NCBI RefSeq assembly: GCF_000002075.1
Contig: NW_004797687.1
Coordinates: forward strand, 379,490 to 433,545
Direction: 5' to 3'
Length of the DNA: 54,056 nt
Source of the DNA: Aplysia californica
Lineage: Eukaryota
Position 1 is the first letter of the stretch. Every line of letters begins with the position of its first letter. Below, in pieces: positions 660 to 33,743 of this stretch. The notes under the pieces are model-generated. The model had not been told where the DNA came from. It searched no databases and saw only the letters and a list, made by a program, of their open reading frames with translations. A program made the position numbers and the translations under genes.

Positions 660-3765
<3,106 letters not shown>

Positions 3766-6759: not shown

Positions 6760-7918
6760 AGAGATATCATAAAGACCAAACAAAAAAATGAGTCAAATAC
6801 CACAGTCAAATTGGGGTCATTCTCTTTCAAACAAACTGGGACCGACCGCTATTTAACCCGATACAAAATCCCAAATGTAGAGAATGTTACGGTCAAAGCT
6901 AGAAATGTAGGTCTGTTGCTTAATGGGGGGAAAATTGGAATCTCTTTGCTTCACAACACTGCTGCAGAGACTTGACTCTATCTTCTAAACGGTTGAAATA
7001 ATTAAGCCAACTCTTGTCTTTCACAAATGGTCTATAAATAGCCCTTGGGTTCCCAATTTTGTCGTCTCTGCATTCCTTCGACGTGTTTTTATTTTATTTG
7101 TTTTTCTAGCTCAGATTTGGAAAGGGGTACTATTTTGTCTTACTGCTATTGTTGAATATCCTTCTTTTTTTTTCTTTTTTTTTGCTGCCCGGTTTATTAT
7201 ATTATTATTTTTTATACTTGCTTTGGGATTTGTTTCATAAACAAAGCTTTATTCAACTAGCGCTATTTTTGCAAAAGAAAAAAACAACGAAAGGGACCTC
7301 AAAACAAGTGACCAATCAAACTCTAGTGCCGTTTTTATTCTCCTTTTTGCGCGTAAATATTTGCCATAGACTTAGATCAGTCTATATAGTTCATATCTTT
7401 ATTCAGGCGGCTGTCTTCATATTTTGGTCGTGCATGATCGATGATCAATGAAAGATTTGAACGGGAACAATTCTTATATTTCTTTGGCATCGATACAGAC
7501 ACTCAGACACTATTATTTTATTTAATTTTGACCACTAAATAAAATCTAGCTAATTTATTACGGTTAACTATGCCCAAGAAACTTAACGCGTAGCTTTTTT
7601 GCAGGCCAGCAACCAAACAAAAATGTAATACTACAGCATTTGTCTTTGGGTTTTTTTCATTGAAATATCTTGATGTAATAATAATTAAAACAAAAAATCC
7701 TCTGTCTAGGCTCACATTGCTTTTTTGGTGAATACAGAGGATTAGCATGGGTGGTTGACGGGTGCTCTGGTGTGGTTTGTTCCTTCTTTCCTATCAAACA
7801 CCTATCGTATCTCTCCTTATTCTTCTTTTTTTATGGTAGTTACTCTTAACACCTCTAATAATTATCTTCTGGCGCTCATATGACCTTACGCAGCTGCAAG
7901 CGCCGTAAAACCTTTACT
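6760..7918. repeat. Visible part of the left inverted-repeat arm in copy A (reverse complement of 12519-13671)
   Basis: ORF 7149..7451(+) mirrors 12984..13253(-); nucleotide reverse-complement match. Confidence 0.92.
7748..7918 (+). mobile_element. I/Nimb-like LINE 3' end fragment (also 12519-12690 -, 19141-19199 -, 21719-21870 -, 40069-40240 +, 44805-44980 -)
   Basis: Terminal motif ggcgctcatatgacctta...gcgccgtaaaa followed by an A-rich tail; shared with the tail of the SINE at 10121; clade assignment is from recalled consensus. Confidence 0.55.
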
Positions 7919-8429
7919 NNNNNNNNNNNNNNNNNNNNNNNNNNNNNNNNNNNNNNNNNNNNNNNNNNNNNNNNNNNNNNNNNNNNNNNNNNNNNNNNNN
8001 NNNNNNNNNNNNNNNNNNNNNNNNNNNNNNNNNNNNNNNNNNNNNNNNNNNNNNNNNGCTATCTCTCACGTCAAGTGTAGCCTATCTCTTTGTAGTACAT
8101 TACTACTCGGACTATTTTAGCTCACCATTAAAAATCTAAGGGTTTAGGACTCAAAGTCCTCCATTTCGGATATTAATTAAAAGTTTTAAGGAACAGACTC
8201 CCGTGCAGTCGTGTAAGATTGGTTTTTACCACATAGTGTAATGCATAGAGCTGGAGTTATTCGCCTAAATCGAGAGCGCTGTCGGATCTGTCTTTCTGTC
8301 TTCATAATTATTGTATTTCTTGTAGTGCCCACATTAACTATACCTAAGTGTGGGGTCATCCCATCACACGTTCTGGTGACGTCATAGTTTTTGAAAAAAT
8401 AACCTTGCTGATGATTACAAAACAAGAAG

Positions 8430-9835
8430 ATAATAATAATAATGATAATAATAAAGATCATTTCTATAATGCTCTAGGCGCTTTACATAAATGCATGTAC
8501 AAGCAATATTCACCCACACGATACACACACCCACATGATACACACACCCACACACACACACACATACACACATACACCCATACACACACAAACGCACACA
8601 CACNNNNNNNNNNNNNNNNNNNNNNNNNNNNNNNNNNNNNNNNNNNNNNNNNNNNNNNNNNNNNNNNNNNNNNNNNNNNNNNNNNNNNNNNNNNNNNNNN
8701 NNNNNNNNNNNNNNNNNNNNNNNNNNNNNNNNNNNNNNNNNNNNNNNNNNNNNNNNNNNNNNNNNNNNNNNNNNNNNNNNNNNNNNNNNNNNNNNNTATC
8801 ACATGCGCACGCTTACACATCATTACGAAATGAGCACATTCACATACATAATAGAATAATATATACACAATGCAATTCGCAAAATACATAAATGGATACG
8901 TAGTCATTTAAATAACATTGTACTGAACATGAATCTACTGACGTAAAAATTATGTCTTTAAATGTGTCTTTAAAGATTCTTTAAATTTAAACTCAGATGT
9001 TGTATGTCTCAAGGGTTGGGGAAGAGAAGTTCCAAACTGATGGAGCAAGGTGGGCAAACGATCTTTCAGCTAATTTTTTACCCCCTTTTCTAGGAACTCT
9101 TAAAATATACTGATCGCATGATCTTAGTGATCTAGATGAAACATAAATCTGGATGAGATGACTAAGATATGAGGGAGCTTTGTTATTGACACATTTATGA
9201 CAAAATATTGCAATTTTATATGACATTCTAGCTGACACGGGAAGCCAATCCAACATTTTTAACATGGGAGTAACGTGATCCCTCTTCTTTTTCTTTAGTA
9301 CAAGCCTAGCAGCATGATTTCGAAAACGTAACTTGTGAAGAGTGGTATTTGGTAAGTTAGCTAGTAAAGCATTGCAATTTAATAATCAATGCGTGAAAAC
9401 AAGAAAGATGACACGAGCGTTTTCATCGAGTGTTCATTCAAAAACATAGACATATGACCAATTCTACGCAATTCACCAAAAAAAATGGTACACAAATAAT
9501 TGATATGATGTTCCATTGACAATTTAGAATCAAAATACACTCCCAGATTTTTTTGCTTTATCAGTAAAATACAGTTTTTCATTTTCAGTACAAATATGAT
9601 AAAAGTCTATGGGGACATGGCTTTTCCTTGGGTTACATAAAAGAATTTCAATTTTATTTTCATTAAGCTGGAAGTTATTATCAATCATCCACATCTTTAC
9701 TTTATCAATACACAGACTAATAATATGGTGTTAAGCAAGGTTTTAACATCTGATGGTGGAATAGATTTATAAATATAACTGTGTATCGTCTGCATACGAG
9801 TGATAATTCATATTTTGCTTTCTGATCACAGCTCC
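8430..9835 (-). mobile_element. L2/CR1-group LINE 3' portion, decayed
   Basis: Minus strand encodes HSYADDTQLY (RT motif, ~9774-9803), QLNENKTE, KNLGVYFDSKLSM, SRIDYCNALL, LDWLPVSARMSYKI; 3' end gtaaagcgcctagagc...(tta)n tail. Confidence 0.9.
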
Positions 9836-9849
9836 AAACTAGCCTGGAC

Positions 9850-9908
9850 ACGATTAGAGACACAACCTTAACGATCGTGAGTCCAGCTGTCTAACCAATG
9901 GGCCATCC
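9850..9908 (-). mobile_element. Degenerate tRNA-derived SINE head
   Basis: Reverse complement gatggcccattggttagacagctggactcacgatcg... has an A-box-like motif and a decayed B box. Confidence 0.4.
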
Positions 9909-10120
9909 TATCTACACCTTGAGCTAAAAATTGCGAAAATTATAATTATACGTAGCTACTTAAAAGTGACTCACCGGTTGGTTGACGGCCGGGTGTTCTG
10001 GTGCAGGCGTGTCCTTTTTAATGTTTCCTCTCAATAGTATCAAATATCGTCCTTATCTCTCCTTCTGTTCATTGTAAACAACTTTCTAGTATCGCCAGAG
10101 ATTTTTACAGTGCCCCCACG

Positions 10121-10680
10121 GGGCTCTCGTTGCCTAGAGGTTAAGGTGTTCGCCTCTCATTCAATAGGTCCTGGGTTCGAATCCGGAAGCGACGGACATT
10201 TTTCTTCTCTAAAATGGTCTCCTTTCACCTCCTTTTCTGCTCTCCAGCAATGTTCTGTCGTCTGTTTTCGACTCTGCTTTCTGCACCCACCCCTTCACCT
10301 CCTTTGCCCCCTCCTCTGGGCTCCTGACTCTTTCTGCAGCCTTTCTACAGTTACTCCTTGGCTCCTTCTTACTGCTGTCTTTTAGCCACACCCCTGATCT
10401 TAGGGTGGGAAAGGTCAACGCCTAACATGCTCAGACAAGGGCGAAAAATCTCGGAGGTTCTTGTGTGCAAGTTGTGCTCATTAAAGATTCCTATTTTTTT
10501 ATTTGGTGATGGTCCAACATCGATAAGAGTATGTTTCTGCTGCCATCCAGGAAAAATTCAAAGTTTACTACCTACCAACTGAAAATGTTTAATGTGTCTC
10601 ACGCGCTCATATGACCTTATGCAGTTGCGAGCGGTGAAAAAAAAACAACAAAAAAAAACAAACACACAACCAAAACAACA
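10121..10680 (+). mobile_element. tRNA-head SINE with Deu/Nin-like core and I/Nimb-like tail
   Basis: A box TGCCTAGAGG 10131-10140, B box GGTTCGAATCC 10174-10184; core ttgtgctcattaaagattcc...taagagta...ccaggaaaaattcaaa resembles the Deu/Nin domain; tail gcgctcatatgaccttatgcagttgcgagcggtgaaaa + A/C-rich repeat. Confidence 0.75.
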
Positions 10681-10704
10681 ACACCAACACACACCAACAC
10701 ACAC

Positions 10705-10753
<49 letters not shown>

Positions 10754-11551
10754 AAACTGGCGCCTCTCGCTGTTACTGTAAACACTCTCATGGTATCATC
10801 TTCAATCTTTGCTGCTTTTAAATGTGACCTATAAGATTTGCTTTGCAGGGACCATAAAACTTCCACTGGAGTTAAAATGAAAGAATTATAATATGTAGAT
10901 CTAAGTCGGGAAATATTACAATGACGTGCTGTTACTGTAAATGCTATGAAAACTGAGTAGGCTAGAGTAGGCTATTTCCTGAGAATAGCACCCCTCATCG
11001 GACCAGATAGGCCTAGCCAGTGGCGAAGCGTCGAAATCAAATAATTTTCCCATCCTAATTTTGAAACATTGTCGTAGTCAAAATCACCCTTAAACGTAAA
11101 CCTCATAAATTAAATGTAAAAAGACGTTCATAATCACCAATGAACAGTATGCCTAACATTCTAAGCGCTTTCATTTTATTGCCACAGAAATTGCCCGTTT
11201 TGTATTTTCTAATACAAAAGACCTTTTCTGAGTTGCTCCAGGATATGGCTGATGCAACGACAGTCCTTGTTTGACAAGTTCCCATTTGAGCATAGATTCG
11301 GCGTCCAGTTGATCAAACATATTTCATCCCAAATTTGGTGCAGATCTGCGCAGAATTGGAGAAGTTAGATCTATTAATTGTTTCCTCGAGGTCATTGAGT
11401 CTGGGACAGTAGTTATATTATAACATACATATATAGATATTTCACACACAAAAAAAATGACATTGAATGTTTTTTCAACAGCAGAAACACTTGGAGCATG
11501 CCGGTGGCTCAATTTCTCTGATATTGAATTAAGCCCACGCATGCATTTATA

Positions 11552-12389
11552 CAATGGAGTCCACTTATAACGAGTCCTGAAACAACGATAAATCTGTTAT
11601 AAAGACACTCTTCTAAAACCCCGTTTTTTTCCCCTTCTTTATCTTTGTGAATAAAATACTGCTATAGCGCAACCAGACAAACACGGGAGTCGGTTATAGC
11701 GTATTATTGATGCTGCTGTGCACAGCGCATAAGCCATTTATACATAATGTAACACCTCGCCAGTTGAGAAACTTGTTGGTGATCTAGCGAAACCTAGAAC
11801 CTTACATCAACTCCTTGAGCGAAACAAAGAATGGGAGAGCCCACGTTTGCTAACAATGAAGGTCAGAGCAATGAGTGGGGAGGGTGTGGTATGCGCAGAC
11901 AAGCAGAACGCATTGCGTGATAGGCCAGCCTAGTCTAAATTTCTACCCAGGCCCTCAGTTCTCCGATGCGGGGATGGAGAGGTCACAATGCTGTGATGGA
12001 TGGAGTGAAAGGGTATGCAACGTGCGCAAGCAGACGAAACTCACCACAGGGTATGGTGGGGTGGGGGGCAACCAAGGAGTTTAGAACTTTTAATCTCCTT
12101 GGGGACAACACAGCGGGCGAGTTAGCCCAGAGCGCATTCTTTCTGATCGCCAACGCCGTGCTGTCAACATCGCTAGCGCTAGGGAAAGAAACCCGATTCG
12201 ATTTTTGATCAAGTAAGACCAAGAGGTCATGTTGAACAATGTCATCATCAGGGGAGATAACAAAAAGAAATAAACAGAACACTAAACTCGTAGATTAGAC
12301 CTACTTTATTATTTCCATTTATTACTGGATTCCCTATAACGAGAATCCTGGTATAACTTTTGCACCGGTCACCTCCCTCTCGTTATAAC
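11552..12389. mobile_element. pogo/Tigger-like (Tc1/mariner) non-autonomous element; right end runs into the gap
   Basis: TA|CA(A/G)TGGAGTCCACTTATAACGAG left TIR; CTCGTTATAAC at right; complete in the duplicate 43872-44725. Confidence 0.8.
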
Positions 12390-14212
12390 NNNNNNNNNNN
12401 NNNNNNNNNNNNNNNNNNNNNNNNNNNNNNNNNNNNNNNNNNNNNNNNNNNNNNNNNNNNNNNNNNNNNNNNNNNNNNNNNNNNNNNNNNNNNNNNNNNN
12501 NNNNNNNNNNNNNNNNNNTTTACGGCGCTCGCAGCTGCGTAAGGTCATATGAGCGCCAGAAGATAATTATTAGAGGTGTTAAGAGTAACTACCATAAAAA
12601 AAAAAGAAGAATAAGGAGAGATACGATAGGCGTTTGATAGGAAAGAAGGAATAAACCACACCAGAGCACCCGCCAACCACCCATGCTAATCCTCTGTATG
12701 CACCAAAAAAGCAATGTGAGCCTAGACAGAGGATTTTTTGTTTTAATTATAATTAATGCATCAAGATATTTCAATGAAAAAAAAACAAAGACAAATACTG
12801 TAGTATTACATTTTTGTTTGGTTGCTGGCCTGCAAAAAAAGCTACACGTTAAGTTTCTTGGGCATAGTTAACCGTAATAAATTAGCTAGATTTTATTTAG
12901 TGGTCAAAATAAAATAAAATAATAGTGTCTGAGTGTCTGTATCGATGCCAAAGAAATATAAGAATTGTTCCCGTTCAAATCTTTCATTGATCATCGATCA
13001 TGCACGACCAAAATATGAAGACAGCCGCCTGAATAAAGATATGAACTATATAGACTGATCTAAGTCTATGGCAAATATTTACGCGCAAAAAGGAGAATAA
13101 AAACGGCACTAGAGTTTGATTGGTCACTTGTTTTGAGGTCCCTTTCGTTGTTTTTTTCTTTTGCAAAAATAGCGCTAGTTGAATAAAGCTTTGTTTGTGA
13201 AACAAATCCCAAAGCAAGTATAAAAAATAATAATATAATAAACCGGGCAGCAAAAACAGAAAAAAAGAAGGATATTCAACAATAGCAGTAAGACAAAATA
13301 GTACCCCTTTCCAAATCTGAGCTAGAAAAACAAATAAAATAAAAACACGTCGAAGGAATGCAGAGACGACAAAATTGGGAACCCACCAAGGGCTATTTAT
13401 AGACCATTGGTGAAAGACAAGAGTTGGCTTAATTATTTCAACCGTTTAGAAGATAGAGTCAAGTCTCTGCAGCAGTGTTGTGAAGCAAAGAGATTCCAAT
13501 TTTCCCCCCCATTAAGCAACAGACCTACATTTCTAGCTTTGACCGTAACATTCTCTACATTTGGGATTTTTTATCGGGAAAGCGGTCGGTCCCAGTTTGT
13601 TTGAAAGAGAATGACCCCGATTTGACTGTGGTATTTGACTCATTTTTTTGTTTGGTCTTTATGATATCTCTCTTCTCTTAAGATAGTCTTTATCTTTACA
13701 CTTTTTCTGACAAAGTGAACTTGATCTTAAGGTGGGAAGAGTGACTTGATAGTGTTAAATCTATTGAAACGTTGAAAGAAAGGAGCGACGCGGACAGCCT
13801 CCATCGCGGCCATTTTTGACTGACGGCGAGTGATTGTCGACGAGCTAGCTCTCGTAAAAAGCTTAATATCTACCGATGTTTCGGGTTTTGTGAAAGAATG
13901 ATAACGTACCACGCAAGCCCACCATTAAAACTGACAATATTCAAAATAAACGAATGTTTTCTATCAATGATCTTTGTGAAATTGTCCAATTTCCACGGTT
14001 GTAATTTGACGACGCCGTAAGAAGTGTGCTGCGACACGTGGCAAAACAATAGAAAAACAATATTTCTACAAAATGCAAAGACACAAATTCTCTGAGAACA
14101 TCAGCAAAAATAAGTTTTCTATCTTGAGAAGGGAAATTAGGAGCGATGTACACCTCGTAAACGCATGCATTTTAATTTCAAGTGATGTCGATGTGACAGC
14201 GAGCGCATGTTT

Positions 14213-14499
14213 TATCGATAGAAAAATTTGATTTTTGCACCGCACACTACACAATTTGCATAAAAAGGGGTAATAATTTCTTGGTTAACCATTTATCTAG
14301 CCTTGAAGGACTATGAAAGAAACATTTAGTTTACTGCATTAAGTTGTAGCTCGGAGATCTACATGTTCTTGCACAGATTCGCACAGCCTAACGAAATAGA
14401 CGACATCGGCGCAGCAAAAAATACACCGTGACGTAGGTGCTCTCTCGGACGTCCGCGCGAAATGGTCATATAGCAAGCGCTCGCCGTGATCCGTCAGTT
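14213..14499 (+). promoter_or_regulatory. Histone H1 promoter
   Basis: DRE TATCGATA 14213-14220, octamer ATTTGCAT 14254-14261, AAAATACAC (H1-box-like) ~14418, TGACGT 14429, E2F GCGCGAAA 14455-14462, TATA-like 14469, Inr TCAGTT 14494-14499. Confidence 0.7.
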
Positions 14500-14578
14500 C
14501 AGAATCAGCACTCGTTGCGAAGTGACCACTCTCTTTTTTCATTTTCCGCCCTCGTCTTCGTTCACATTTTCACTCACA

Positions 14579-15154
14579 ATGTCTGACGCTCCAGCTGCTG
14601 CCCCAGCCAAGGCTACCCCCAAGAAGAAGGCTCCCGCCAAGCCTAAAGCCCCCGCCGCTCACCCTCAGTACAAGGTGATGGTCGCTGCCGCCATCTCTGC
14701 ACTGAAGGAGCGCGGTGGCTCTTCCCGCCAGGCCATTCTCAAGTACATCATGGCCAACTACAAGGTCGGTGATAACCCCACTGCCATCAACGCTCGTCTC
14801 AAGACTGCCCTCAAGGCCGGCGTCAAGGCTGGAACCCTGAAGCAAGCTAAGGGAACTGGCGCTGCCGGCTCTTTCCGCCTGGGAGAGAAGAAAGTGGAGA
14901 AAAAACCCGCCAAGAAAGTTGCCAAGAAACCCAAGTCCCCCAAGAAGGCGGCCAAGCCCAAGAAAGCCGCTGCCAAGAAGCCAAAATCTCCCAAGAAGGC
15001 CGCCGCCAAGAAACCTGCTGCCAAAAAAGCCGCTGCCAAACCCAAGAAGGCCAAGAGCCCAGCCAAGAAAGCCGCCAAGCCCAAGGCTGCTGCCAAAAAG
15101 CCAGCGGCAAAGAAGGCTGCTGCCAAGCCCAAGAAGGCTGCTGCCAAGAAGTAA
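14579..15154 (+). CDS. H1: Histone H1 (linker histone), 191 aa, intronless
   Basis: ATG at 14579 ([11 protein letters not shown]); globular domain [30 protein letters not shown]...[10 protein letters not shown]; K/A/P-rich tail with SPKK motifs. Confidence 0.98.
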
Positions 15155-15191
15155 GCAGCTGGTTTTCCCACATCCAGCAACCTCACAATAC

Positions 15192-15207
15192 GGTCCTTTT
15201 CAGGACC
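15192..15207 (+). terminator. Histone mRNA 3' stem-loop
   Basis: GGTCCT-TTTC-AGGACC followed by ACC, 37 nt after the stop. Confidence 0.97.
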
Positions 15208-15695
15208 ACCCCCATTCGTCCAGATGGGTTGAATCTTCGATCCGAGTTGAAACCATTTCTTGATCATCTTAATGCTGCTCTATACTAGTACTAGTACGCG
15301 ATCTACCTTTCTTTATCTGCCCTGAAACCTTTCCTAGTCTTTTCCATTTCCTGATCTTACGTTAATTATACTTCACAGTTTACTACATGGCCAGTGACCG
15401 ACTTCCATAGCCATGGCTGCCCGTGAGGGCAAATTAAAAAAAAAATAGTCGACTGAAACCACGTTTAATGCGTCCAGCGCGCTCATGTCATGATGTGGTA
15501 CACATCACATCATGTATACAGTATAGATCTTGCTCTATGCCAGTTTTGCGAGCACCGTAAAAAACTTGCGCCCCCCCCCCCAAAAAAAAAAAAGTTTCTC
15601 GGGAAAGAAAAGAGACCGAGCCGAGAGTCGATGGAACCCCCGACAGTCGGTTGACGAAAGAGGAACCGTTCACAATTTCAATTAGATCTAGATCT

Positions 15696-15985
15696 AGTCG
15701 CTTTTGCACAAGTGGGCTGTCCCGACAAATGCTGTTTTGTGAAAGTCAAAGGCGAAGTTATTGCCTCTTGTTCAGGTTCTTTAAAAGACAAGGAGTTTTC
15801 TCTCTACAGACTCTACTATAACTATAACAAAACAAATACAGTGGAACAAACTTATCTGCTTTTAGTTTTTAAAGAGGTACATGTAGTGCAATACTCACCC
15901 ACTTTTGGTGTAAATTAGAACAGTATTTTTGGACACCCCCCGAAATCTGGGTTAGCCCGCTTGTCCTAAAAAAAAAAAGCAATCA
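15696..15985. mobile_element. MITE, inverted diverged relative of 20120-20378 (duplicate ~48025-48320)
   Basis: Ends tagtcgcttttgcacaagtgggctgtccc / gggttagcccgcttgtccta match the TIRs of the 20120 element. Confidence 0.65.
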
Positions 15986-17796
15986 AATGTAACAGCAGAG
16001 AGGGATCAGCGAAAGGGGGGGGGGGGGGGGGGGTTCCTTACAAAGTTGACCTCAAGCTGTAAAAGTTTGGAGGGTGGGGGAAAGTGAAGATGTATTTTAG
16101 TACATGATGTGTAAAATAAGACCGCATTTCCTTAGCCTTGTTGAATAATGTAATTTGACAGTTCAGGTACATTATAATGTATGTCTTTAATAAAATTAAG
16201 TTTTTATTTTTCTTATAAAAAACAAAGATCACTGTAGATGAAAAGACGGGGGGGGGGGGGGGGGGGGATTTTCGCTGACGTCATTTGTGATCGCTCTCTT
16301 ACGTCTCTTACTAGTCTTACGTGTACCCAATATATTTTTTAAATTTACCTAATTTATTTCTCTCCTACTCCCAGTTCCACACAATAGACCTTGCTTGGTG
16401 CATTTTTAACAATCTTTATGCCAAATTGGAAGCTTCTACTTTTCTAGTTCTAGTAAGATTTTTACGTGCTTTATTTCAGTTCAACACTTTTTCAAACACT
16501 TTAGATTAAAACGTCATTTTCATTTAGGCATTGGGACCCAAAAGAACAGGAAATAATAATTTTTTTCCGTACAAAAGAAATTTTAAAAGAATATTTTATC
16601 GAAATGGGATCGCTTACTCAGGTCTTCCCTTAAGTTTTTTCCTGGCAACTTCACTTTAATTAAATTTTTTTTTTTTAAAACGTTCTCTTTTTTAAAAAAA
16701 GTTTAGTTTTTTTTTTTTTTAATGGCTGAAACCTTAAACCAAAACGAAAAAAAAAGCTTTTCATCTAAATAGTCATTACATCGACATGCGACAAATGAGA
16801 AATACCGGTAGGCCGAAACTCGCAGTGTAAAGATTAAGAGGTGGACGATAATACATCATAATACATTATAGTGTAAAGCGCATAGAGCACGCTTTCGAGT
16901 GGGGATGCGCTATACAAAAATGCTGGGTTTTTTCGTTCTAAAAGTAAAAGTACATGTAGTAGTAGTAAATGAATCGGCAATCATTTGCTGGTCAGCCATT
17001 GGCTTTGACTTTGATTGCCTTTGGGGAGTGACCAAAAAGAAGAAGAAAAGAAAAACAAACAAAAAACCAACAGAAAATTGTTTACACACACACACATATA
17101 TATATAATGGATTGAACACACTTTACACACTCTGGTAAAAACTGTACAAGTACCTCATCATGTTTTGTCACAACGTGGTTAGCTCTACGTCATTAAAGAA
17201 ACTAGGTTGTCTTGGATATTTTACAGATTAATAATAGCTCATCTTGGCTATCATTTACTAGTCATTTATGGTTTTCATTGACCTTTGGAAGAGAATGAAG
17301 AGAAGAAATTAGATCTATGTTCATCCAGTTGAATGTATTGTTACAACTAACTACATGTAGCTATCTATCACTATCAGGAAATCGATAAATTGTCCCTCAG
17401 GACAAGTGACGACAAAAGTACACGAAGCGTGCTGACAAAATGAGTTACTTCTCAGATTCGAGGCCGATGGAAAAGTAGAGATACATCACGCATAGGTGAC
17501 GTTTTTACAATTTATAAGTTGTAGGAAACAATAAAAGGCATGTTATACTAAAAGAATCTATGGCATAAATAGAAGCTCTGCAAATTTGACCCTAATGTCG
17601 ATTTTTGGCCAATATCTCTCATAGCATCTGCGTTTGTCGCGGCCGCGATTTTGTCAATTTTTGGTCCGCGAATCGCGGCCGCTATTTTTTGCATTGAAAA
17701 AAACCCCCCACACGGCCGGGAAATAAAAAATCGAAACAAAACGGGGTTAAAAAAAACGGAAAAAAAGAGAAGAAACTGAACTTCTTTACTTACGAG

Positions 17797-18603
17797 AAGT
17801 CTGTTATAAAGACACGATTCTAAAACCCCGCTTTTTTCTCTTCTTTACCTTTGTAAATAAAATACTGCTATAGCGCAGTCAGACAAACATGCGAGTCGTT
17901 TATAGCGGAATATAACTGCTGCTGTGCACAGTGCATGGGCCAATTATACATAAAGTAAAACCTCGCCAGTTGAGAAAGTTGTTGGTGATCTAGCGAAACA
18001 AAGAATGGGAGAGCCCATGTGTGCCAACAATGAAGGCCAGAGCGGCTGAGTGGGTAGGATGTGGCATGCGCAAACAAGACGAAAGCATCGCGTGATAGGC
18101 CAGCGTAAGCCTAGTTTAGATTATCAAGGCCTACCATGCCTCTCACTTTTCCGATGCGGGGATGGAGAGGTCACAGTGCTGTGACTACTGTGAGTGATGG
18201 ATTGAGCGAATGTATGACGTGCGCAAGCAGACAGAGGGCACCACAGGGTGGGGTGGGGCGGGGGAAAACCACAAATTCTGTGGGGAAAACACAGTGGGCG
18301 AGTTAGCCCAGAGCCGAGGATACCGGAACTAAAGATTTATTTTGGTAGCCTCGCCCAGAGCCCTTTCTTTCTGATCGCCAACGCCGAGCTGTCAGTTCAC
18401 ATCGCTAGATTTAGCGCTCATGTTGAAACAAAATCATCATCAGGGGAGATAGCAAAAGGAAATAAACAGAACACCAAACTCATAGATTAGGCCTACTTTA
18501 CAGTTTCCCTTGAATTTATTACTAGATCCCTTATAGCGAGAATCCTGCTATAACGGACATTTTGCTCCGGTCCCCTCCCTCTCGTTATAACAGGATTCCA
18601 CTG
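17797..18603. mobile_element. pogo/Tigger-like MITE, same family as 11552, left end missing
   Basis: Colinear with 11592-12389; right TIR CTCGTTATAACAGGATTCCACTG|TA. Confidence 0.8.
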
Positions 18604-18742
18604 TATTAGCCTGTGACTGAATCTATTAACAACATAATTTCCAAAGGTTGGGGGTTAACAAAAATCGTGAATATTTTATATAATATAGAAATTTGGCCCT
18701 TGTTGCTAGATCAAAATTTAAATGTTCTTCTTCTAATTCTGG

Positions 18743-18920
18743 GTCCCCATGGTTTTATGCACCCCGCATAATTTAAATAGGATCGTTTTTTGCATAATTT
18801 CTGAATATTTTCCTTTATCATTCTTTGCTAAAATTAACACAATCGCATAATTTCACATTTTTGGGCTCAGTTTGCATAATTTCATAATTATTTTTTGTGT
18901 GTGCATAAAACCATGGGGAC
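18743..18920. mobile_element. 178-bp MITE with 20-bp perfect TIR (duplicate 51187-51364)
   Basis: GTCCCCATGGTTTTATGCAC ... GTGCATAAAACCATGGGGAC; internal gcataattt repeats. Confidence 0.85.
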
Positions 18921-19440
18921 AGATCTATGGATTGAATCAGTTGTACCTCTACATGACCTATTTAAGAGTAAGTAATGTATAGAGGTCTAGAAGAAGTTTA
19001 TTTTGTCGCAGTCATACACATGAATGTAGATCGGTAGGAGGGGAGAAGCTGGTTGGTGGTAAATTTGGATTTTCCAGTCAGTGGGTCAACGGTACATTTC
19101 TCAATTTCAGTGTCAAAGTCCATTGCCCGTTCACTATTTGTTTTTTTAGTAAAGTTTTACGGCGCTCGCATACAATACATAAAAGTCATATGAGCGCCAA
19201 GGGGTGGATGTCAACAGAGAAGTCCAAACGGGGAATCAGGCTTACTCTGCGCATATCATGATCTCTCTAGCCTCAACAGCACAGGTCTGCTTCGAATATC
19301 AAGGCACCTCGGAAAAAGCAGTTCACAAATGAGTGACGAACATACAGAAGAAGTAGAAAAAAATGACGATAGTAAGGATGAGGAAAGAAAACCATCCACT
19401 GTCCTCCCTTCAGCATTTCTACAGGGCATGGGTAGTGGCA

Positions 19441-19521
19441 GTAGTCGATACTCACTGTCCAATTATCGAGTACTCTATCGAGTACTCTATCGAGTACTCT
19501 ATCGAGTTCTCTATCGACTAC
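19441..19521. repeat. 12-bp tandem repeat (TATCGAGTACTC) inside a 10-bp inverted repeat
   Basis: GTAGTCGATA ... TATCGACTAC enclosing 4 units; 3 units in the duplicate ~51885-51953. Confidence 0.85.
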
Positions 19522-19591
19522 GGTATCGGTAATACAGCAACAAAGGTCAATTTTACCAGACAGTTCACTTTTCTCTAATTTTGAGCAACTT

Positions 19592-19595
<4 letters not shown>

Positions 19596-19648
<53 letters not shown>

Positions 19649-19818
19649 TCACTTAGAAACAATTGCCAGTGGTGCCATTTGAGAATTTGAAGAGGTTCGA
19701 ACCCTACCACTAGGGCCTACATGTACATAATATGTACCAAGCCAAGAGAAAAGAAATTGAAGGGCAAATCCCTTGACTTTTATGCGAGAAGGTTCGGTTT
19801 GACTAGCACTAACAGTAG

Positions 19819-19865
<47 letters not shown>

Positions 19866-19886
19866 ACACACAAACAAACAAACAAA
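19596..19886. repeat. Two (CA)n microsatellites
   Basis: Runs at ~19596-19644 and ~19821-19871. Confidence 0.95.
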
Positions 19887-20119
19887 CTTCTTAAAATACA
19901 AAAATGACATAAATGTACTATTATATTACATTAAATGAAATAGACACAATGCACATTATTTCAGTTCAAGAAACTGTTTTTAATCTCTACTAAACTAAAT
20001 GGTAACAAGCAAAATACATCAGAGTCAGAAGAAATCAACAATACACAATCAGTCATTACTGATTCGTTTGCTTCAAATATAAAAATTGAAAATACTGTAT
20101 ACCTAATACCTGCATGCAC

Positions 20120-20378
20120 AATTGGTCGCTTTTAAGGACAAGCGGGCTAACCCAGATTTCGGGGGGTTCCAGAAATTTTGACGTACACAAAAAGTTGGTA
20201 TTGCCCTACCTATAGGAGAAGTTTAGTTTCATTGGTGTGTATATATCTGTTTGGTTATAAGAGAAAACTCTGCTTGTCTTTTACAGAAACTGAACAAGGG
20301 GCAAAAACTTTACCTTTGTTGATTTTCTCAAAAAAACATTTTTCGGGATAGCCACATTGTGCTTAAAAGAGACCAATT
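20120..20378. mobile_element. MITE with ~33-bp imperfect TIRs (duplicate ~52554-52811)
   Basis: AATTGGTCGCTTTTAAGGACAAGCGGGCTAACCC / GGGATAGCCACATTGTGCTTAAAAGAGACCAATT. Confidence 0.8.
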
Positions 20379-20435
20379 CTCAATTGAAAAGCTTTTGTGA
20401 CTGATATAATAATAAATAAAAAATATATTTATATA

Positions 20436-20999
20436 CAGTGGAAACCATATATAACAGGCCCGGTAATAACAGGGATCCGGTAATAACAGGGGTTTTTAAA
20501 TCCCCGTTTTTTCCTACTCTTTGCCTCTATTACAAGTTATCGGCAAGAACAGGGCCTCATCGGAGCCAAATCGGTCATAGCAGGGACAAAAGNNNNNNNN
20601 NNNNNNNNNNNNNNNNNNNNNNNNNNNNNNNNNNNNNNNNNNNNNNNNNNNNNNNNNNNNNNNNNNNNNNNNNNNNNNNNNNNNNNNNNNNNNNNNNNNN
20701 NNNNNNNNNNNNNNNNNNNNNNNNNNNNNNNNNNNNNNNNNNNNNNNNNNNNNNNNNNNNNNNNAGCTACACGCAAGCGGGTTAATGTGTCATGCTGCAG
20801 ACTTCAAACAAGCTAAGACTAGCTACACGCAAGCGTAATGTGTCATGCGCAGGCCATGGGAAACTACCAATGAATAAATACAGCTGGATTAGTTCACAAA
20901 TGCTTACTTCCCTTGCCTTTCTGATTTAACAGGGATCTGATATAACATGACTTTTTCTCTGGTCCCAACATTCCTGTTATACATATCAGGTTTCCCCTG
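20436..20999. mobile_element. pogo/Tigger-like MITE, second family
   Basis: TA|CAGTGGAAACC..TATAACAGG and CCTGTTATA..GGTTTCCCCTG|TA; subterminal TAACAGG repeats. Confidence 0.8.
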
Positions 21000-21393
21000 T
21001 AGCCTATATATATGATACAAATTAGAGATAGATATATAATACATTTTATAAAGCAGAAAAATGAACAAGAATCAACAGAATACCTTCCCTTGGATTGTCT
21101 GTTGACTTATAATATGTATTATAATCCACTTCCTTCTTCGTCTCCACTTTCGTTGAAGATGGTAGTCCAAATATTTTTAAAATGTTAGTTGAAAAACTTG
21201 GTTCGTGAGATTTTTCGGTAAGTTATTCAAGTGGAGATGTTAAAAAAGTGGGCTTCCCACCCTGCCACTGCCAGTAAAGACCAACCCAAGCTGAGAGGGA
21301 CACAACATCCCAGCGGATGATTCTCCCCTCAAGAATAGAACTTGGGTCTCTTTCATGCAACAAGAAAACGCCCCACAGCTACACAACAGATCT

Positions 21394-21568
21394 GTCCCCG
21401 TCGTTTTATGCTAGAAAAATTCTGAAATTATGCAAACTGAGCCCAAAAATGTGAAATTATGCGATTCTGTTAATTTTAACAAAGAATGATAAAGCAAAAT
21501 AATCAGAAATTATGCAAAAAATGATCAAATTTTGCTAAATTAAGCGGGGCGCATAAAACCACGGGGAC
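21394..21568. mobile_element. MITE, inverted relative of 18743-18920 (duplicate 53875-54049)
   Basis: GTCCCCGTCGTTTTATGC ... GCATAAAACCACGGGGAC; interior is the reverse complement of the 18743 element. Confidence 0.8.
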
Positions 21569-21984
21569 AAACAGTCTTGCCACCCCATGACGAGACAATG
21601 TAATGAAGCAATGACACTCCAAAATCAAGCTTTTGTAATAGTCACAGAATGGAAAGTTTGCACCAACACAAAACTACATCAGCCCATCCAGCTTCCCACC
21701 CTCTCGCCTGCACACAGATGTTTGTTTGTTTGAGTAAAGAGTGGCACATTGACACAATAATGGTCATTTAGCCAGAGCTGGGAAAAGGACTGGCAGAAAA
21801 AAAAAACCCAGGGAAAGTACAGAAAAATAAAGGACCTACCAGTGGCACCCTCCAACCACCCGCCGCACACATTTAAAGGTAGGGCCTATACTATTCTTAT
21901 TATAGTTAGAATTAAACTAGATGAAAGTGTTTTTACATCCCTTTAAAGAATAGATCAAGTAGGAAGCCCAATAGCACTTAGAGT

Positions 21985-30902: not shown

Positions 30903-33743
30903 TCACACTTGCAAGGTTTTTCTCCAGTGTTTTCTCGTCATATGTTCTACTCGGTGAGAAGCTCTTGTAAATCTTTTGCCACAAATTTCACACTGGTATG
31001 GTTTTTCTCCTGTGTGTGTTATTTTATGTCTTACTAGACTTCCACTTCTACTAAACGTTTTACCACAAATTTCGCACTTGAAAGGTTTTTCTCCTGTGTG
31101 TATTCTTTTATGCACTAAAAGGCCACTACTATGTGCAAACCTTTTACCACAAACTTCACAATTGTAAGGCTTTTCTCCTGTGTGTGTTCGTACGTGACTC
31201 TTCAAGTCACTGGCAAATAAAAACATTTTGCCACAAGCTTCACACTTGTAACCCCTTTCTCCTGTGTGTACTCTTCTTTTATGTTTCTGTAGGCAGCTAC
31301 TTTCCCTAAATGCTCTTCTACAAATTTCACATTTGTAGGGTTTTTCTCCTGTGTGAATTTTTTTGTGACTCTTCAAGGTCGAGAGATGTGAAAATGCTCC
31401 ACCACAAACTTCACACTTGTAAGGTTTTTCTTTTGTGTGTGTCCTTTTATGAACCTGTAGGCAACGACGTGTTACAAACCTTTTATCACAAACTTCACAC
31501 TTCCAAGGTTTTTCTTCCGTGTGTGTTGTCTTATGTATTAGCAGGCCACAACTGTGTGTAAACCTTTTACCACAAACTTCACACTTGTAAGGCTTTTCTC
31601 CCGTGTGTAATCTTTGGTGACTCTTCAGGACACTGGGTTGTGTAAACTTTTCACCACAAACTTCACACTTGTAAGGCCTTTCTCCTGTGTGTGCTCTTTG
31701 GTGACTCTTCAAAACACAGGCTAGTGTAAACATTGCGCCACAAACTTCACACTTAAAGCGCCTTCCTCTAACGTGTACTTTCATGTGTCTCTGCAGGACA
31801 CCCATCTGTTCAAATGTCGCACCACAAAATTCGCATTTGTAAGATTTTTTTTCCAAGTGTGTTCTTTTGTGTCTGTGAAGATTGTCACTCTCTGCAAATG
31901 TTGCACCACAAAGTTCACATTTGTGAGGTTTTTCATTGGTGTGTGCTTTTTTCAAGTGTCTGTGAAGGCTATCAATCTCTGCAAAAGTCGCACCACAATT
32001 TTCACATTGAGGTTTTTCTCCACTGTGTGTTAATTTATGTCTCAGTAGGCTATCACTTTTTGTAAACCTTTCACCACAAACTTCACACAAGTAAGGTTTT
32101 TCTTCTGTATATGTTCTTTTATGTTTCAGTAGATTACCTCTTTTTGTAAACTTTTCACCAACTTCACACTGCTTTTCCCTTGTGTGTCTTCTTTGGTGAC
32201 TCTTCAAGACACTCGCTTTTGTAAACATTACCCCACAAACTTCACACTTGTAGGGCTTTCCTCTTACGTGAGCTTTCATGTGTCTCTGCAGAACACCCAT
32301 TTGTGCAAAAGTAGCACCACAAACTTCACACTTGTAAACCTTTTTACCTGGGGGTGCCTTATGTCCCAGTAGGGTTTCACTTTTCGTAAATTTTTCACCA
32401 CAAACTTCACTCTCGTAAGGTTTTTCTCCTCTGTGTGCTCTTTGGTGACTCTTTAAGACACTGATTCGAGTAAACATAACACCACAAATTTCACACTCGT
32501 AAGACTTTTCTCCAGTGTGTATTTTTCTATGTCTCCGCATGGCACCCGTCTGTGCAAATGTCGCACCACAAAATTCACTGTCAGATTTTTCTCCCATGTG
32601 TGTTCTTTTATGTCTCTGAAGGCTGTCACTCTTTGCAAATGTTGCACCACAAACTTCACACTTGTACAGCTTTTTTCCAGTGTGTATTTCTTTATGTCTC
32701 AGTAGGTTATCACTTTGTGTAAACTGTTCACCACAAACTTTACACTGGAGAGGTGTTTCTTCTGAGTAAGTATTTTCCCTAACTGTAAGCCTGGGATTAT
32801 CTGAATGACCAGAATCTGTTTCTTTGTACACTTTTGGCTGTGTGGTACTAGAAGGAGACTCAGAAAAATTTACAGAACCAGAAATAGACACAGCACAAGA
32901 AAAGTTGAAACCTGAATCTTTATTCTTGACCCTAAAGCCAGAATTTGAGACATTACATTCCAGAAGAATTGGATCAGCAGAGAAAGTTGAAGTTTGGTGA
33001 GTGGATGCAACAACATCTGTGTCTGGGTTGGAACTCTGCGCCATAGACAAACCCCTTTCAGTGGAGATTTGCTGCTGTAGCCTTCCAGCCTGACTCATGT
33101 GATCCTCAACGAACATGGGCTCCTCCACATCTCCCACTTGTCCTTCTGTCTTTCCCATCTCTCCAAAGTCTGGACCCTCCCATTCAGGCACTTCCTCTTT
33201 CCCAAAAGTCTCCACTTTTGGTTTCACTTCATCATCAATGTCAGGAAAATATTCAAAATGTGGTTCAGTTTTTACCATACCAATATCTGTGAAGCACTCT
33301 GGTTTCATGACTATGACAGGTTTTATCTCTTCCTCCTCCCCAAACAAATAAATAGGCTCATCTTTTACTGCGAAACTTCCGTTTTCAATGTCTGGTTCGT
33401 TTTTTCCCTCGACTTTGACATCATACGGCCATTCAAAACCAGACTCTTCTTTTATCAATGGAAGATGGACGTCTTTTACTTTTACAACAGGTTTTTGTTC
33501 TTTGAGGTCAAACAAGAACAGAGAACTGCTCCTATCTTCAGAGTAATTTTCTCCACTTGTAATGTCATGTTTCACATCTTCCCTTAGAGCATGAGAACTA
33601 GAACTAGAATTACTTGGTGCACCTTGAAAAACGATGCCATCAATGCTCAGATTCATGCCTTCTCCAGAAAAAAGACTATTCACAGTGTCTTCCTCGAAAT
33701 TGACATTCATCATTTGTTTTTCAGAGTTGGAAATGTCAGCCAT
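30903..33743 (-). CDS. Tandem C2H2 (Kruppel-type) zinc-finger protein, 946 aa, 22 finger units (~19 canonical), ~330-aa acidic N-terminus
   Basis: Uninterrupted ORF, AAAATGG start context, repeated CxxC...HxxxH with TGEKP linkers; upstream exons cannot be excluded. Confidence 0.93.
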   Translation of the reverse strand: MADISNSEKQMMNVNFEEDTVNSLFSGEGMNLSIDGIVFQGAPSNSSSSSHALREDVKHDITSGENYSEDRSSSLFLFDLKEQKPVVKVKDVHLPLIKEESGFEWPYDVKVEGKNEPDIENGSFAVKDEPIYLFGEEEEIKPVIVMKPECFTDIGMVKTEPHFEYFPDIDDEVKPKVETFGKEEVPEWEGPDFGEMGKTEGQVGDVEEPMFVEDHMSQAGRLQQQISTERGLSMAQSSNPDTDVVASTHQTSTFSADPILLECNVSNSGFRVKNKDSGFNFSCAVSISGSVNFSESPSSTTQPKVYKETDSGHSDNPRLTVRENTYSEETPLQCKVCGEQFTQSDNLLRHKEIHTGKKLYKCEVCGATFAKSDSLQRHKRTHMGEKSDSEFCGATFAQTGAMRRHRKIHTGEKSYECEICGVMFTRISVLKSHQRAHRGEKPYESEVCGEKFTKSETLLGHKAPPGKKVYKCEVCGATFAQMGVLQRHMKAHVRGKPYKCEVCGVMFTKASVLKSHQRRHTREKQCEVGEKFTKRGNLLKHKRTYTEEKPYLCEVCGERFTKSDSLLRHKLTHSGEKPQCENCGATFAEIDSLHRHLKKAHTNEKPHKCELCGATFAESDNLHRHKRTHLEKKSYKCEFCGATFEQMGVLQRHMKVHVRGRRFKCEVCGAMFTLACVLKSHQRAHTGERPYKCEVCGEKFTQPSVLKSHQRLHTGEKPYKCEVCGKRFTHSCGLLIHKTTHTEEKPWKCEVCDKRFVTRRCLQVHKRTHTKEKPYKCEVCGGAFSHLSTLKSHKKIHTGEKPYKCEICRRAFRESSCLQKHKRRVHTGERGYKCEACGKMFLFASDLKSHVRTHTGEKPYNCEVCGKRFAHSSGLLVHKRIHTGEKPFKCEICGKTFSRSGSLVRHKITHTGEKPYQCEICGKRFTRASHRVEHMTRKHWRKTLQV

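What the first reader, a model, noticed from the sequence alone, without database searches (positions are those of the whole stretch)
30930..31600. ZNF paralogs diverge specifically at base-contacting residues of the C-terminal fingers
Seen: fingers 9-14 have almost identical helices between 1828-3765 and 30903-33743, but fingers 15-22 differ at helix positions -1/2/3/6. The pairs are QSGG/HSCG, YRNY/TRRC, DLSS/HLST, SSRS..I/ESSC..K, ASA..I/ASD..S, GSGN..A/RSGS..R and terminal R/E. Cys, His, Phe and Leu scaffold residues are retained. Known: this is the signature of diversifying selection in KRAB-ZNF and similar TE-targeting families. Inference: an analogous KRAB-less arms-race family in an invertebrate, with the C-terminal fingers as the specificity module.
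Basis: partly seen in the sequence, partly recalled or inferred. Interest (0 to 1): 0.75.

Follow-up and report, generated by a model that had tools for sequence, protein, structure and literature searches.

The report
Fast-evolving sea-hare zinc-finger gene copies
Two neighbouring copies of a sea-hare zinc-finger gene differ mostly at the few amino acids that read DNA bases in their last eight fingers, the known mark of selection for new DNA targets, here in a gene family that seems limited to sea hares.

Summary
Copy A (array 1828-3765) and copy B (30903-33743) share 22 collinear C2H2 fingers. In fingers 15-22, 17 of 32 residues at helix positions -1/2/3/6 differ, against 21 of 192 other residues (Fisher p=2.5e-7). 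dN there is 0.375 against an array-wide dS of 0.098. dS is even along the array (0.086-0.105), so the regional contrast is not a conversion artefact. No donor for gene conversion was found. Both lineages carry the excess, and both show the same constraint at other sites.

Six paralogs on another contig repeat the pattern: contact dN/dS is 2.0-4.2 and non-contact is 0.30-0.51.

The family has about 35 loci. It carries a disordered, acidic N-terminal region rich in SUMO-consensus motifs, with no Pfam match. All named database relatives are Aplysia californica.

- Copy A is 5'-truncated at about codon 299 by a junction that one independent read set also shows.
- A sits in a mosaic, gap-ridden tandem repeat whose flanks are 99-100% identical to B's.
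- A third intact copy lies just outside the window.
- Targeting of transposable elements (TEs) was not tested.

This is a new member of a known kind, the lineage-specific poly-zinc-finger expansions.

The parts
30903..33743 (-). Copy B: intact single-ORF gene of 946 aa, with an N-terminal disordered region and 22 C2H2 finger units (19 canonical)
   Evidence: ORF. Pfam PF00096 at 2e-93 with 17 stretches, and no N-terminal domain. Finger table.
30930..31583 (-). B fingers 15-22, the stretch of the finding. These are unique, canonical fingers whose contact residues differ from A.
   Evidence: 17 of 32 contact residues differ from A. Differences sit in single codons (up to 2 of 3 bases changed) while neighbouring codons are identical.
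31605..32744 (-). B fingers 1-14. They are built from internally repeated finger modules. F3, F5 and F8 are degenerate (Cys/His lost) in A, B and C.
   Evidence: Helix 30-mers of F1-14 lie 2-6 mismatches from other fingers, against 5-12 for F15-22.
32745..33743 (-). B N-terminal 333 aa: acidic (net charge -36), predicted disordered, with 7 psi-K-x-[DE] motifs. The core is conserved across the family.
   Evidence: 7 motifs against 1.4 in shuffles, and 0 of 5000 shuffles reach 7; mean pLDDT 45.8 and no secondary structure; 63% mean column identity among 11 paralogs; no Pfam match at E<=10.
1828..3765 (-). Copy A: array of 22 fingers, collinear with B from B codon 300 onward. The frame is open (652 aa as listed by the ORF tool) but has no upstream ATG and no N-terminal region in cis.
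   Evidence: 93.3% nucleotide identity to B (127 mismatches, one 3-base indel). Contigs with 0 differences in runs X1, X2 and X4.
1849..2502 (-). A fingers 15-22
   Evidence: A-type letters over 1999-2307 are confirmed by an X1 contig with 0 differences. Letters over 1813-1936 and 2159-2334 are confirmed by X4 contigs.
3766..3889 (.). Sequence abutting the 5' end of the A array. It is 100% identical to window 43750-43873 and 98% to 11431-11553, and it also resembles a dispersed repeat. It marks a deletion-type junction that removes about 10.9 kb relative to unit B.
   Evidence: The junction at 3765 is bridged by X1 contig record 8 (3639-3816, 0 differences). X2 record 16 (3639-3794) has only 29 letters beyond the junction, fewer than the 31 the tool asks for.
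1400..1812 (.). A-specific sequence 3' of the array: a 237-bp dispersed-repeat insertion (1400-1636) and a 96-bp indel (1717-1812), both absent from B
   Evidence: alignment. B-type contigs skip 1399->1637 and 1716->1813; 75-84% matches on many contigs.
3890..3989 (.). Assembly gap (100 N) inside the A locus. It was not filled or looked up.
3990..5422 (-). B-like N-terminal ORF (4259-5422, 98% to B) running on into a B-like linker and F1-F4. Quality decays towards the contig end (3990-4330), which gives an apparent frameshift. It overlaps the gene positions that the A-array contig also covers, but with B-type letters.
1..21575 (.). Tandem unit 1, which carries A and two histone H1 genes. It is 98-99.6% identical to unit 2 (29271-54056) except over the finger array.
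   Evidence: Flank 1001-1398 has 1 mismatch in about 400 columns against B's flank.

Best explanation
A and B are diverged copies of one member of a lineage-specific poly-C2H2-zinc-finger family of Aplysia californica. The protein has a disordered, acidic N-terminal region rich in SUMO-consensus motifs, followed by 22 fingers.

After an older duplication (dS about 0.10), both copies fixed many amino-acid changes at the base-contacting helix positions (-1, 2, 3, 6) of the eight unique C-terminal fingers. The zinc-binding scaffold, most linkers and fingers 9-14 stayed under purifying selection. The most likely cause is positive (diversifying) selection for new DNA-binding specificity. This is the same process described for KRAB-ZNF, FiNZ-ZNF and other poly-ZF expansions.

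Shown here: the substitution pattern, its excess over the synonymous rate, its presence on both lineages, its recurrence in other family members, and the absence of conversion donors.

Inferred only: that fingers 15-22 are the part that reads DNA, that the N-terminal region recruits a repressor (perhaps through SUMO), and that the targets are transposable elements.

Later events blurred the locus. Recombination or conversion in the 26-29 kb tandem repeat made the flanks nearly identical. B and C separated recently (dS about 0.03). A deletion-type junction cut off A's first 299 codons.
For: 1. Contact excess. F15-22 has 17 of 32 contact against 21 of 192 other residues changed (p=2.5e-7). dN is 0.375 against an array dS of 0.098 (p=1.4e-5). 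Non-contact dN/dS is 0.47-0.62.
2. Even dS. dS is 0.105 in F1-8, 0.086 in F9-14 and 0.100 in F15-22. Contact dN is 0.098, 0.017 and 0.375 in the same three blocks. The contrast therefore lies in amino-acid change, not in age or conversion.
3. Codon-confined changes. Contact codons often differ at 2 of 3 bases while neighbouring codons are identical, for example in F16 and F18.
4. No donor. The next-best genome match to A's F15-22 is 76% identical. Helix 30-mers of F15-22 have 5-12 mismatches to any other finger in the held family loci or in the two arrays themselves.
5. Both lineages. Polarised with outgroup D, the A lineage has 12 nonsynonymous and 0 synonymous changes at contact sites, and 15 and 11 elsewhere. 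The B/C lineage has 8(+2) and 2(+1) at contact sites, and 16(+3) and 10(+1) elsewhere.
6. Replication. In the six paralogs on contig C282 (15 pairs), contact dN over array-wide dS is 2.0-4.2 and non-contact is 0.30-0.51. With the contact codons' own dS, 14 of 15 pairs exceed 1 (my division of the values printed). Three non-overlapping pairs give 4.05, 4.18 and 2.49. Per-position variability peaks at -1, 2, 3 and 6 (0.66-0.78), against 0-0.07 at the scaffold.
7. The A sequence is real. A-type contigs with 0 differences sit beside B-type contigs in X1, X2 and X4.
8. Family setting. There are 47 genome matches to the N-terminal region and no Pfam domain. All named relatives are Aplysia californica.
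Against: - Only two to three sequences carry the local signal. For the whole array, contact dN/dS is not significantly above 1 (p=0.07). The F15-22 block was chosen after looking at the data.
- B vs C shows no contact enrichment (3 of 88 against 11 of 524, p=0.44), although there are few differences to judge from.
- A is 5'-truncated. It has lost linker prolines after F10, F13, F16 and F17 where B, C and (where it aligns) D keep them. It drew only 1 read at 99% or better, out of 38 laid, in the one poly-A RNA run. It may now be a pseudogene.
- The array is 93% identical between units while both flanks are 99-100% identical. The three-way signal is mosaic: A and B group against C at 69 sites upstream, while B and C group against A in the array. 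The history involves recombination that I cannot fully reconstruct.
- The scaffold around the gap is internally inconsistent.
- Parsimony with outgroup D is weak at fast sites: 20 of the differing bases could not be polarised.
- Counts use Nei-Gojobori estimates, not a likelihood site model.
- No evidence on DNA targets, TE binding or repression.
Confidence: 0.68

Rival explanations
1. Short-tract gene conversion or finger shuffling. Helix-coding stretches were copied in from other fingers or paralogs. Because fingers differ mainly at contact codons, conversion would mimic contact-specific divergence without selection.
For: The locus lies in a recombining tandem repeat with a mosaic three-way signal. 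Fingers 1-14 are visibly built by internal duplication. dS at the 32 contact codons of F15-22 (0.21, from 3.8 differences) is nominally higher than elsewhere (0.083). Depths hint at unassembled B-type copies, which might hide donors.
Against: No donor was found. The next-best genome match is 76%. The nearest 30-mers to F15-22 helices are 5-12 mismatches away. Changes are confined to single codons, with identical codons between and beside them, which a tract would not give. dS is even along the array.
Confidence: 0.1
2. Relaxed constraint. A is a truncated pseudogene, and the differences are its neutral decay.
For: A lacks the N-terminal 299 codons and any upstream ATG. It has lost linker prolines after F10, F13, F16 and F17. 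It showed no clear RNA support in one run. Non-contact dN/dS in F15-22 is 0.62.
Against: Neutral decay cannot push dN to 3.8 times dS, and it cannot focus on four helix positions (17 of 32 against 21 of 192). The frame is open for 652 codons despite 127 substitutions. The A lineage has the same non-contact ratio of nonsynonymous to synonymous changes (15:11) as the B lineage (16:10), and about half of the polarised contact changes lie on the B/C lineage. The junction flank is 100% identical to its source, which suggests the truncation is recent.
Confidence: 0.07
3. A-type and B-type arrays are alleles or haplotypes of one locus, or a mis-scaffolded contig, rather than neighbouring paralogs. 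The '29-kb distance' would then be an assembly product. Selection could still act, as balancing or diversifying selection on alleles.
For: There are 12 N gaps in 54 kb. A direct repeat sits straight across one gap (21792-25653 against 25754-29585). The two contigs beside the A gap both cover the linker and F1-F3 but with different letters. Both flanks of the A block are 99-100% identical to unit B. The A:B contig depth differs between runs, roughly 1:1, 1:3 and 1:7 (the tool warns that depth is not copy number).
Against: A-type and B-type contigs occur together in all 3 DNA runs laid, which come from three samples and studies. One of these may be the assembly's own source. Synonymous divergence of 0.10, a 237-bp insertion, a 96-bp indel and a distinct 5' junction are a lot for alleles. 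The assembly holds three units.
Confidence: 0.12

Closest known systems
KRAB zinc-finger proteins (KZFPs) of tetrapods
   Same: Tandemly clustered poly-C2H2 genes with TGEKP-type linkers, recent duplicates, and excess amino-acid change at helix positions -1/2/3/6 (positions as given in PMC2604467, passages read). An N-terminal non-DNA-binding region precedes the array.
   Different: No KRAB domain (Pfam). The N-terminal part is about 260-330 aa, disordered and found only in Aplysia. The animal is a gastropod. TE binding and KAP1-type repression are unknown here.
FiNZ-ZNF family of cyprinid fish (Wells et al. 2023, PMC10547256; abstract and passages read)
   Same: A lineage-restricted poly-ZF subfamily defined by its own glutamate-rich N-terminal sequence with no known domain match. 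It shows positive selection on base-contacting residues among recent paralogs.
   Different: FiNZ is a 28-aa sequence in fish, and no homology is claimed or tested. FiNZ genes have knock-down and embryonic-expression evidence for TE repression; this family has none.
Lineage-specific poly-ZF expansions in insects and fish without KRAB (Emerson & Thomas 2009, PMC2604467; passages read)
   Same: KRAB-less expansions with dN/dS > 1 concentrated at DNA-contacting helix residues.
   Different: That study held no mollusc, judging by its species list as read. It used codeml site models on clades of 5 or more genes; I used pairwise counts.
   Same: It describes about 38 copies of a fast-evolving sea-hare-only ZNF family with an unstructured acidic N-terminal exon. 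That matches my independent counts (about 35 places and 47 matches; pLDDT 45.8; Aplysia-only names).
   Its SETDB1-motif idea was not tested here.

Membership tests
Krueppel-type poly-C2H2 zinc-finger proteins | Tandem C-X2-C-X12-H-X3-4-H units joined by TGEKP-like linkers | tested here: met
   PF00096 at 2e-93 (17 stretches) and PF13465 at 3.4e-136. 19 canonical units of 22 in B and in A by my stricter pattern; a looser pattern gave 19 for B and 18 for A.
KRAB-ZNF (KZFP) | N-terminal KRAB domain | tested here: not met
   No KRAB among the Pfam hits of the whole protein at E<=0.01. No Pfam hit at all for the N-terminal region of two paralogs at E<=10.
KRAB-ZNF (KZFP) | Binding of transposable elements and KAP1/SETDB1-dependent silencing | not testable with these tools
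   No motif predictor, TE library or binding data were available.
SCAN-, BTB- or ZAD-ZNF | SCAN, BTB/POZ or ZAD domain at the N-terminus | tested here: not met
   None among the Pfam hits. AlphaFold2 predicts no folded domain.
FiNZ-ZNF | 28-aa FiNZ N-terminal sequence, restricted to cyprinids | not tested
   No FiNZ model or sequence was on hand. Only the analogy (a Glu-rich N-terminus of its own) is noted, from PMC10547256.
Adaptively evolving lineage-specific poly-ZF expansion (functional class) | Recent tandem paralogs restricted to one lineage | tested here: met
   Three copies lie within 60 kb on contig C417, and clusters lie on C282, C31 and others. Of the 14 profile hits among 1.84 billion representatives, 8 are named and all 8 are Aplysia californica; 5 are unnamed and 1 was not looked up.
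Adaptively evolving lineage-specific poly-ZF expansion (functional class) | dN/dS > 1 concentrated at base-contacting helix positions | tested here: met
   A vs B, F15-22: 0.375 against 0.098. C282 group: 2.0-4.2 in 15 of 15 pairs with array-wide dS. These are pairwise Nei-Gojobori estimates; no likelihood site model was run.
SUMO-dependent repressor region (functional idea for the N-terminus) | Clustered psi-K-x-E consensus sites (consensus recalled, not from a call) that are actually sumoylated and needed for repression | tested here: inconclusive
   The motif count is 7 against 1.4 expected, and 6 of the 7 motifs are kept in 8-11 of 11 paralogs. Modification and function cannot be tested here.

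The most novel reading that the evidence does not exclude
The disordered, acidic, SUMO-motif-rich N-terminal region, seen so far only in Aplysia, is an independently evolved effector module that plays the part of KRAB or FiNZ. Its roughly 35 fast-evolving ZNF genes would then form a gastropod system for sequence-specific silencing of transposable elements. Fingers 15-22 of this gene would be the re-targetable reading head. The gene would sit in a copy-number-variable tandem unit co-amplified with histone H1 genes.
Probability: 0.25. Interest if true: 0.6.

Novelty: new member of a known kind. Interest (0 to 1): 0.35.

Why it matters
It adds a gastropod example to the growing case that poly-zinc-finger families with their own lineage-specific N-terminal modules evolve under selection for new DNA targets across animals. 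A vs B is a clean natural contrast: the scaffold and synonymous divergence are the same, fingers 9-14 are frozen and fingers 15-22 are rewritten. That contrast could be used directly in binding assays to ask which fingers set the target. The Aplysia-only N-terminal region is a candidate new repressor module. None of this changes the current understanding of such families. It extends that understanding to a new lineage.

Tried and rejected
- Assembly chimera or sequencing error as the source of the A array: rejected. A-type contigs with 0 differences occur in X1, X2 and X4, and an X1 contig bridges the 5' junction. The scaffold around the gap remains doubtful.
- Real frameshift in A after finger 1 (ORF 4259-5422 ends early): probably an artefact. 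Homopolymer indels and mismatches pile up towards the contig end at 3990-4330. I did not correct or join anything.
- Conversion donor: searched for and not found.
- Folded N-terminal domain: AlphaFold2 on 11 paralogs gave mean pLDDT 45.8, pTM 0.10 and no secondary structure. No fold search was run, because matches to such a model would be meaningless.
- Expression of A: the one raw poly-A RNA run laid 38 reads. 35 lay only partly on the stretch, and 1 was 99% alike or better. They look like reads from other family members. This is no evidence either way for other tissues or stages.
- Exact look-up of B's protein: not in the 15-billion-protein collection. B itself is also not among the hits. 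The 946-aa ORF therefore seems not to be annotated as such.
- Literature: searches found no paper on this Aplysia family. The Aplysia transcriptome paper PMC9282427 mentions C2H2 expansion only for octopus (passages read). Supplementary files were not opened. The supplementary data of PMC10547256 (per-species ZNF counts and entropies) may include Aplysia.
- Earlier notes of the scan: searches by words and by sequence were blank. The search by genome gave s1-725178.
- TE targeting: not attempted, because no predictor or TE library was on hand.
Full report
**What the window is.** The window is eukaryotic. It lies at C417:379490-433545 of a 927-Mb, 4332-contig genome. Protein sources name the relatives of its genes Aplysia californica. 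A self-comparison shows a tandem unit of about 29 kb present twice (1-21575 and 29271-54056), at 98-99.6% identity. Each unit carries histone H1 genes and one poly-zinc-finger gene on the minus strand. There are 12 runs of N.

**The gene copies.**
- Copy B (30903-33743) is an intact 946-aa ORF.
- Copy C is also intact and 99% identical to B. It lies just beyond the window at C417:436728-439568.
- Copy A is split in the assembly. One contig (1-3889) holds the finger array. A 100-N gap follows (3890-3989). A second contig (from 3990) holds a B-like N-terminal ORF (4259-5422).
- A collinear paralog on contig C22 (D; 913 aa from its first Met, 921-aa open frame; 73% nucleotide identity) serves as the outgroup.

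**Check of the observation.** The finding's span is B's fingers 15-22 (30930-31583).

| A vs B comparison | Contact residues changed | Other residues changed | Fisher p |
|---|---|---|---|
| F15-22 | 17 of 32 | 21 of 192 | 2.5e-7 |
| F1-14 | 7 of 56 | 29 of 331 | 0.45 |
| Whole array | 24 of 88 | 50 of 523 | 2.2e-5 |

F9-14 has 1 nonsynonymous difference in 24 contact codons. The contact residues of F15-22 differ more often than those of F1-14 (p=1e-4). Divergence is not confined to contact residues: linkers and positions -2 and 5 also change.

Nei-Gojobori estimates give an array-wide dS of 0.098 and dN of 0.060.
- Contact positions of F15-22: dN is 0.375, which is 3.8 times the array dS (counts 22/75 against 34/367, p=1.4e-5). 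It is 1.8 times the noisy dS of the same 32 codons.
- Non-contact sites: dN/dS is 0.47 overall and 0.62 in F15-22.
- Whole array, contact positions: dN is 0.159, not significantly above dS (p=0.07). The strict claim of dN > dS therefore depends on the F15-22 block, which was picked after seeing the data.

Three further results support a selective cause:
- dS is even along the array (0.105, 0.086 and 0.100 for F1-8, F9-14 and F15-22). Contact dN in the same blocks is 0.098, 0.017 and 0.375.
- The changes sit in single codons, often at two of three bases, between codons that are identical.
- With D as outgroup, the changes fall on both lineages. The A lineage has 12 nonsynonymous and 0 synonymous changes at contact sites, and 15 and 11 elsewhere. 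The B/C lineage has 8(+2) and 2(+1) at contact sites, and 16(+3) and 10(+1) elsewhere. Both copies were therefore constrained at ordinary sites for most of their separate history.

**Gene conversion as a rival.** A search of the whole genome with A's F15-22 found B and C at 91% and nothing else above 76%. The 30-base helix-coding stretches of F15-22, in both the A and B versions, are 5-12 mismatches from any other finger in the 27 family loci I held or in the two arrays themselves. Fingers 1-14, by contrast, are built from internally repeated modules and lie 2-6 mismatches from other fingers. Conversion from an unassembled donor cannot be excluded.

**Replication in the family.** The N-terminal 330 aa of B match 47 places in the genome, about 35 distinct loci by my reading of the table. 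These include clusters on C282, C31 and C113. In most members the N-terminal core is a separate exon.

Six paralogs on C282 (85-90% nucleotide identity) give 15 pairs:
- Contact dN over array-wide dS is 2.0-4.2. Non-contact is 0.30-0.51. All 15 Fisher p-values are at or below 9e-8.
- The pairs are not independent. Three non-overlapping pairs give 4.05, 4.18 and 2.49.
- With the contact codons' own dS, 14 of 15 pairs exceed 1.
- Variability by finger position peaks at -1, 2, 3 and 6 (0.66-0.78). Next come position 1 (0.60) and the residue before the second His (0.57). Cys, Phe, Leu and His stay at 0-0.07.

B vs C is too similar to test (dS 0.028; 3 of 88 against 11 of 524).

**What copy A really is.** Homology between the A array and B starts at B codon 300. 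The 124 bases upstream of that point (3766-3889) are 100% identical to window 43750-43873 and 98% identical to 11431-11553, in the same orientation. They also have weaker matches across the genome. The junction is what a deletion of about 10.9 kb within a unit would give. It removes the N-terminal 299 codons and the upstream region. There is no in-frame ATG ahead of finger 1. The last bases before the junction look like a splice acceptor, but I have no evidence that it is used.

On the 3' side, A has a 237-bp dispersed-repeat insertion and a 96-bp indel that B lacks. Below position 1399 the flank is practically identical to B's, with 1 mismatch in about 400 columns.

The contig on the other side of the gap carries a B-like N-terminus and runs on through a B-like linker and F1-F4. 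Errors increase towards its end. The two contigs therefore overlap in gene coordinates but differ in letters, which makes the scaffold doubtful at this point.

Three-way informative sites are mosaic. Upstream of the gene, A and B group against C at 69 sites. In the array, B and C group against A. I read this as recombination or conversion within a tandem cluster, laid over an older A/B split. I cannot reconstruct the order of events.

**Reads (runs chosen).** In the three DNA runs, which come from three samples and studies, contigs identical to A lie beside contigs carrying the B-type letters. One of the three may be the assembly's own source.
- A-type examples: X1 1999-2307, 3124-3265, 3413-3585 and 3639-3816; X2 3124-3265 and 3639-3794; X4 1813-1936 and 2159-2334.
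- The X1 contig at 3639-3816 bridges the 5' junction with 51 letters beyond it. The X2 contig has only 29.
- Contig word depths for A-type against B-type are about 14:13 and 11:11 in X1, 53:157 in X2, and 8-12:68-80 in X4. This hints at variable copy number or heterozygosity, and perhaps at collapsed B-type copies. The tool warns that such depths are not copy numbers.
- The one raw poly-A RNA run laid 38 reads. 35 lay only partly on the stretch and 1 was 99% alike or better. There is no evidence that A is expressed in that sample.

**The N-terminal region.**
- Pfam finds nothing, neither for the whole protein beyond fingers nor for the N-termini of two paralogs at E<=10.
- A profile of 11 paralogs (alignment A1, 63% mean column identity) found only 14 proteins among 1.84 billion representatives. 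Eight are named and all eight are Aplysia californica. Five are unnamed and one was not looked up.
- AlphaFold2 on that alignment predicts disorder: mean pLDDT 45.8 and no secondary structure.
- The region is acidic (net charge -36). It holds 7 psi-K-x-[DE] motifs against 1.4 in shuffles, and 0 of 5000 shuffles reach 7. Six of the seven are kept in 8-11 of 11 paralogs.
- That this motif is the SUMO consensus is recalled knowledge. Whether the sites are modified is unknown.

**Comparison with what is known.** Positive selection on DNA-contacting residues in lineage-specific poly-ZF expansions, including KRAB-less ones in insects and fish, was shown by Emerson and Thomas (PMC2604467; passages read). 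Wells et al. (PMC10547256; abstract and passages read) did several related things:
- They extended the link between ZNFs and TEs across metazoans, and noted large ZNF numbers in molluscs.
- They found base-contacting residues to be the most variable in octopus, weevil, sea urchin and zebrafish.
- They defined FiNZ, a fish-specific Glu-rich N-terminal sequence.

The present case has no KRAB, SCAN, BTB or ZAD domain, so it is not a member of those families. It behaves like them in its evolution. My three literature searches found no description of this Aplysia family. Supplementary files were not seen. I could not confirm that by sequence.

**Verdict.**
- The selective reading is the best explanation (confidence about 0.68) and is replicated family-wide.
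- The TE arms race and the role of the N-terminus remain inference.
- The case is a new member of a known kind and of moderate interest.

Noticed in passing
window 1-21575, 29271-54056; C417:436728-439568 (L002): The ZNF gene is part of a 26-29 kb tandem unit that also carries histone H1 genes (for example 14486-15154 +, 37601-38269 -, 46992-47471 +), on inverted repeats inside each unit. At least three units are assembled. H1 and the ZNF gene are thus co-amplified.
   Followed up: partly
window 21792-25653 vs 25754-29585: A 3.9-kb direct repeat at 98.5% identity lies straight across a 100-N gap. This is the usual look of two haplotigs or collapsed repeat copies placed side by side, and a warning about the assembly here.
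   Followed up: no
window 3990-4330: The contig end shows homopolymer indels and rising mismatches against B. This produces the apparent frameshift after finger 1 of the A-unit ORF (4259-5422). It is probably low-quality sequence rather than a real mutation.
   Followed up: partly
G000 C282:625-820 kb (L010-L028), C31:1.35 Mb, C113:1.52 Mb: Most other family members keep the N-terminal core (B residues about 25-266) on its own exon, ending after the conserved ...TFSADP. The finger exon lies 2-4 kb away. The copies on C417, C22, C124, C129 and C388 have one continuous ORF, so they have lost an intron or read through it.
   Followed up: partly
window 1828-3765 and 30903-32843 (fingers 3, 5, 8): Fingers 3, 5 and 8 have lost zinc ligands in A, B and C. 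Finger 8 is intact in outgroup D. B and C have further lost the second His of finger 5 and one linker residue between fingers 9 and 10. The front half of the array is therefore partly decayed, while F9-22 form 14 intact fingers in a row.
   Followed up: partly
Read laying on window 1300-3889: The ratio of A-type to B-type contig depth differs between three DNA runs, about 1:1, 1:3 and 1:7. This suggests that the unit number varies between animals, or that A-type is heterozygous in some. B-type depth in one run also exceeds what two to three assembled copies would give.
   Followed up: no
window 1400-1636 and 3766-3889: Both edges of the diverged A block coincide with pieces of dispersed repeats (75-85% matches on dozens of contigs). 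Repeats may have mediated the rearrangements.
   Followed up: partly
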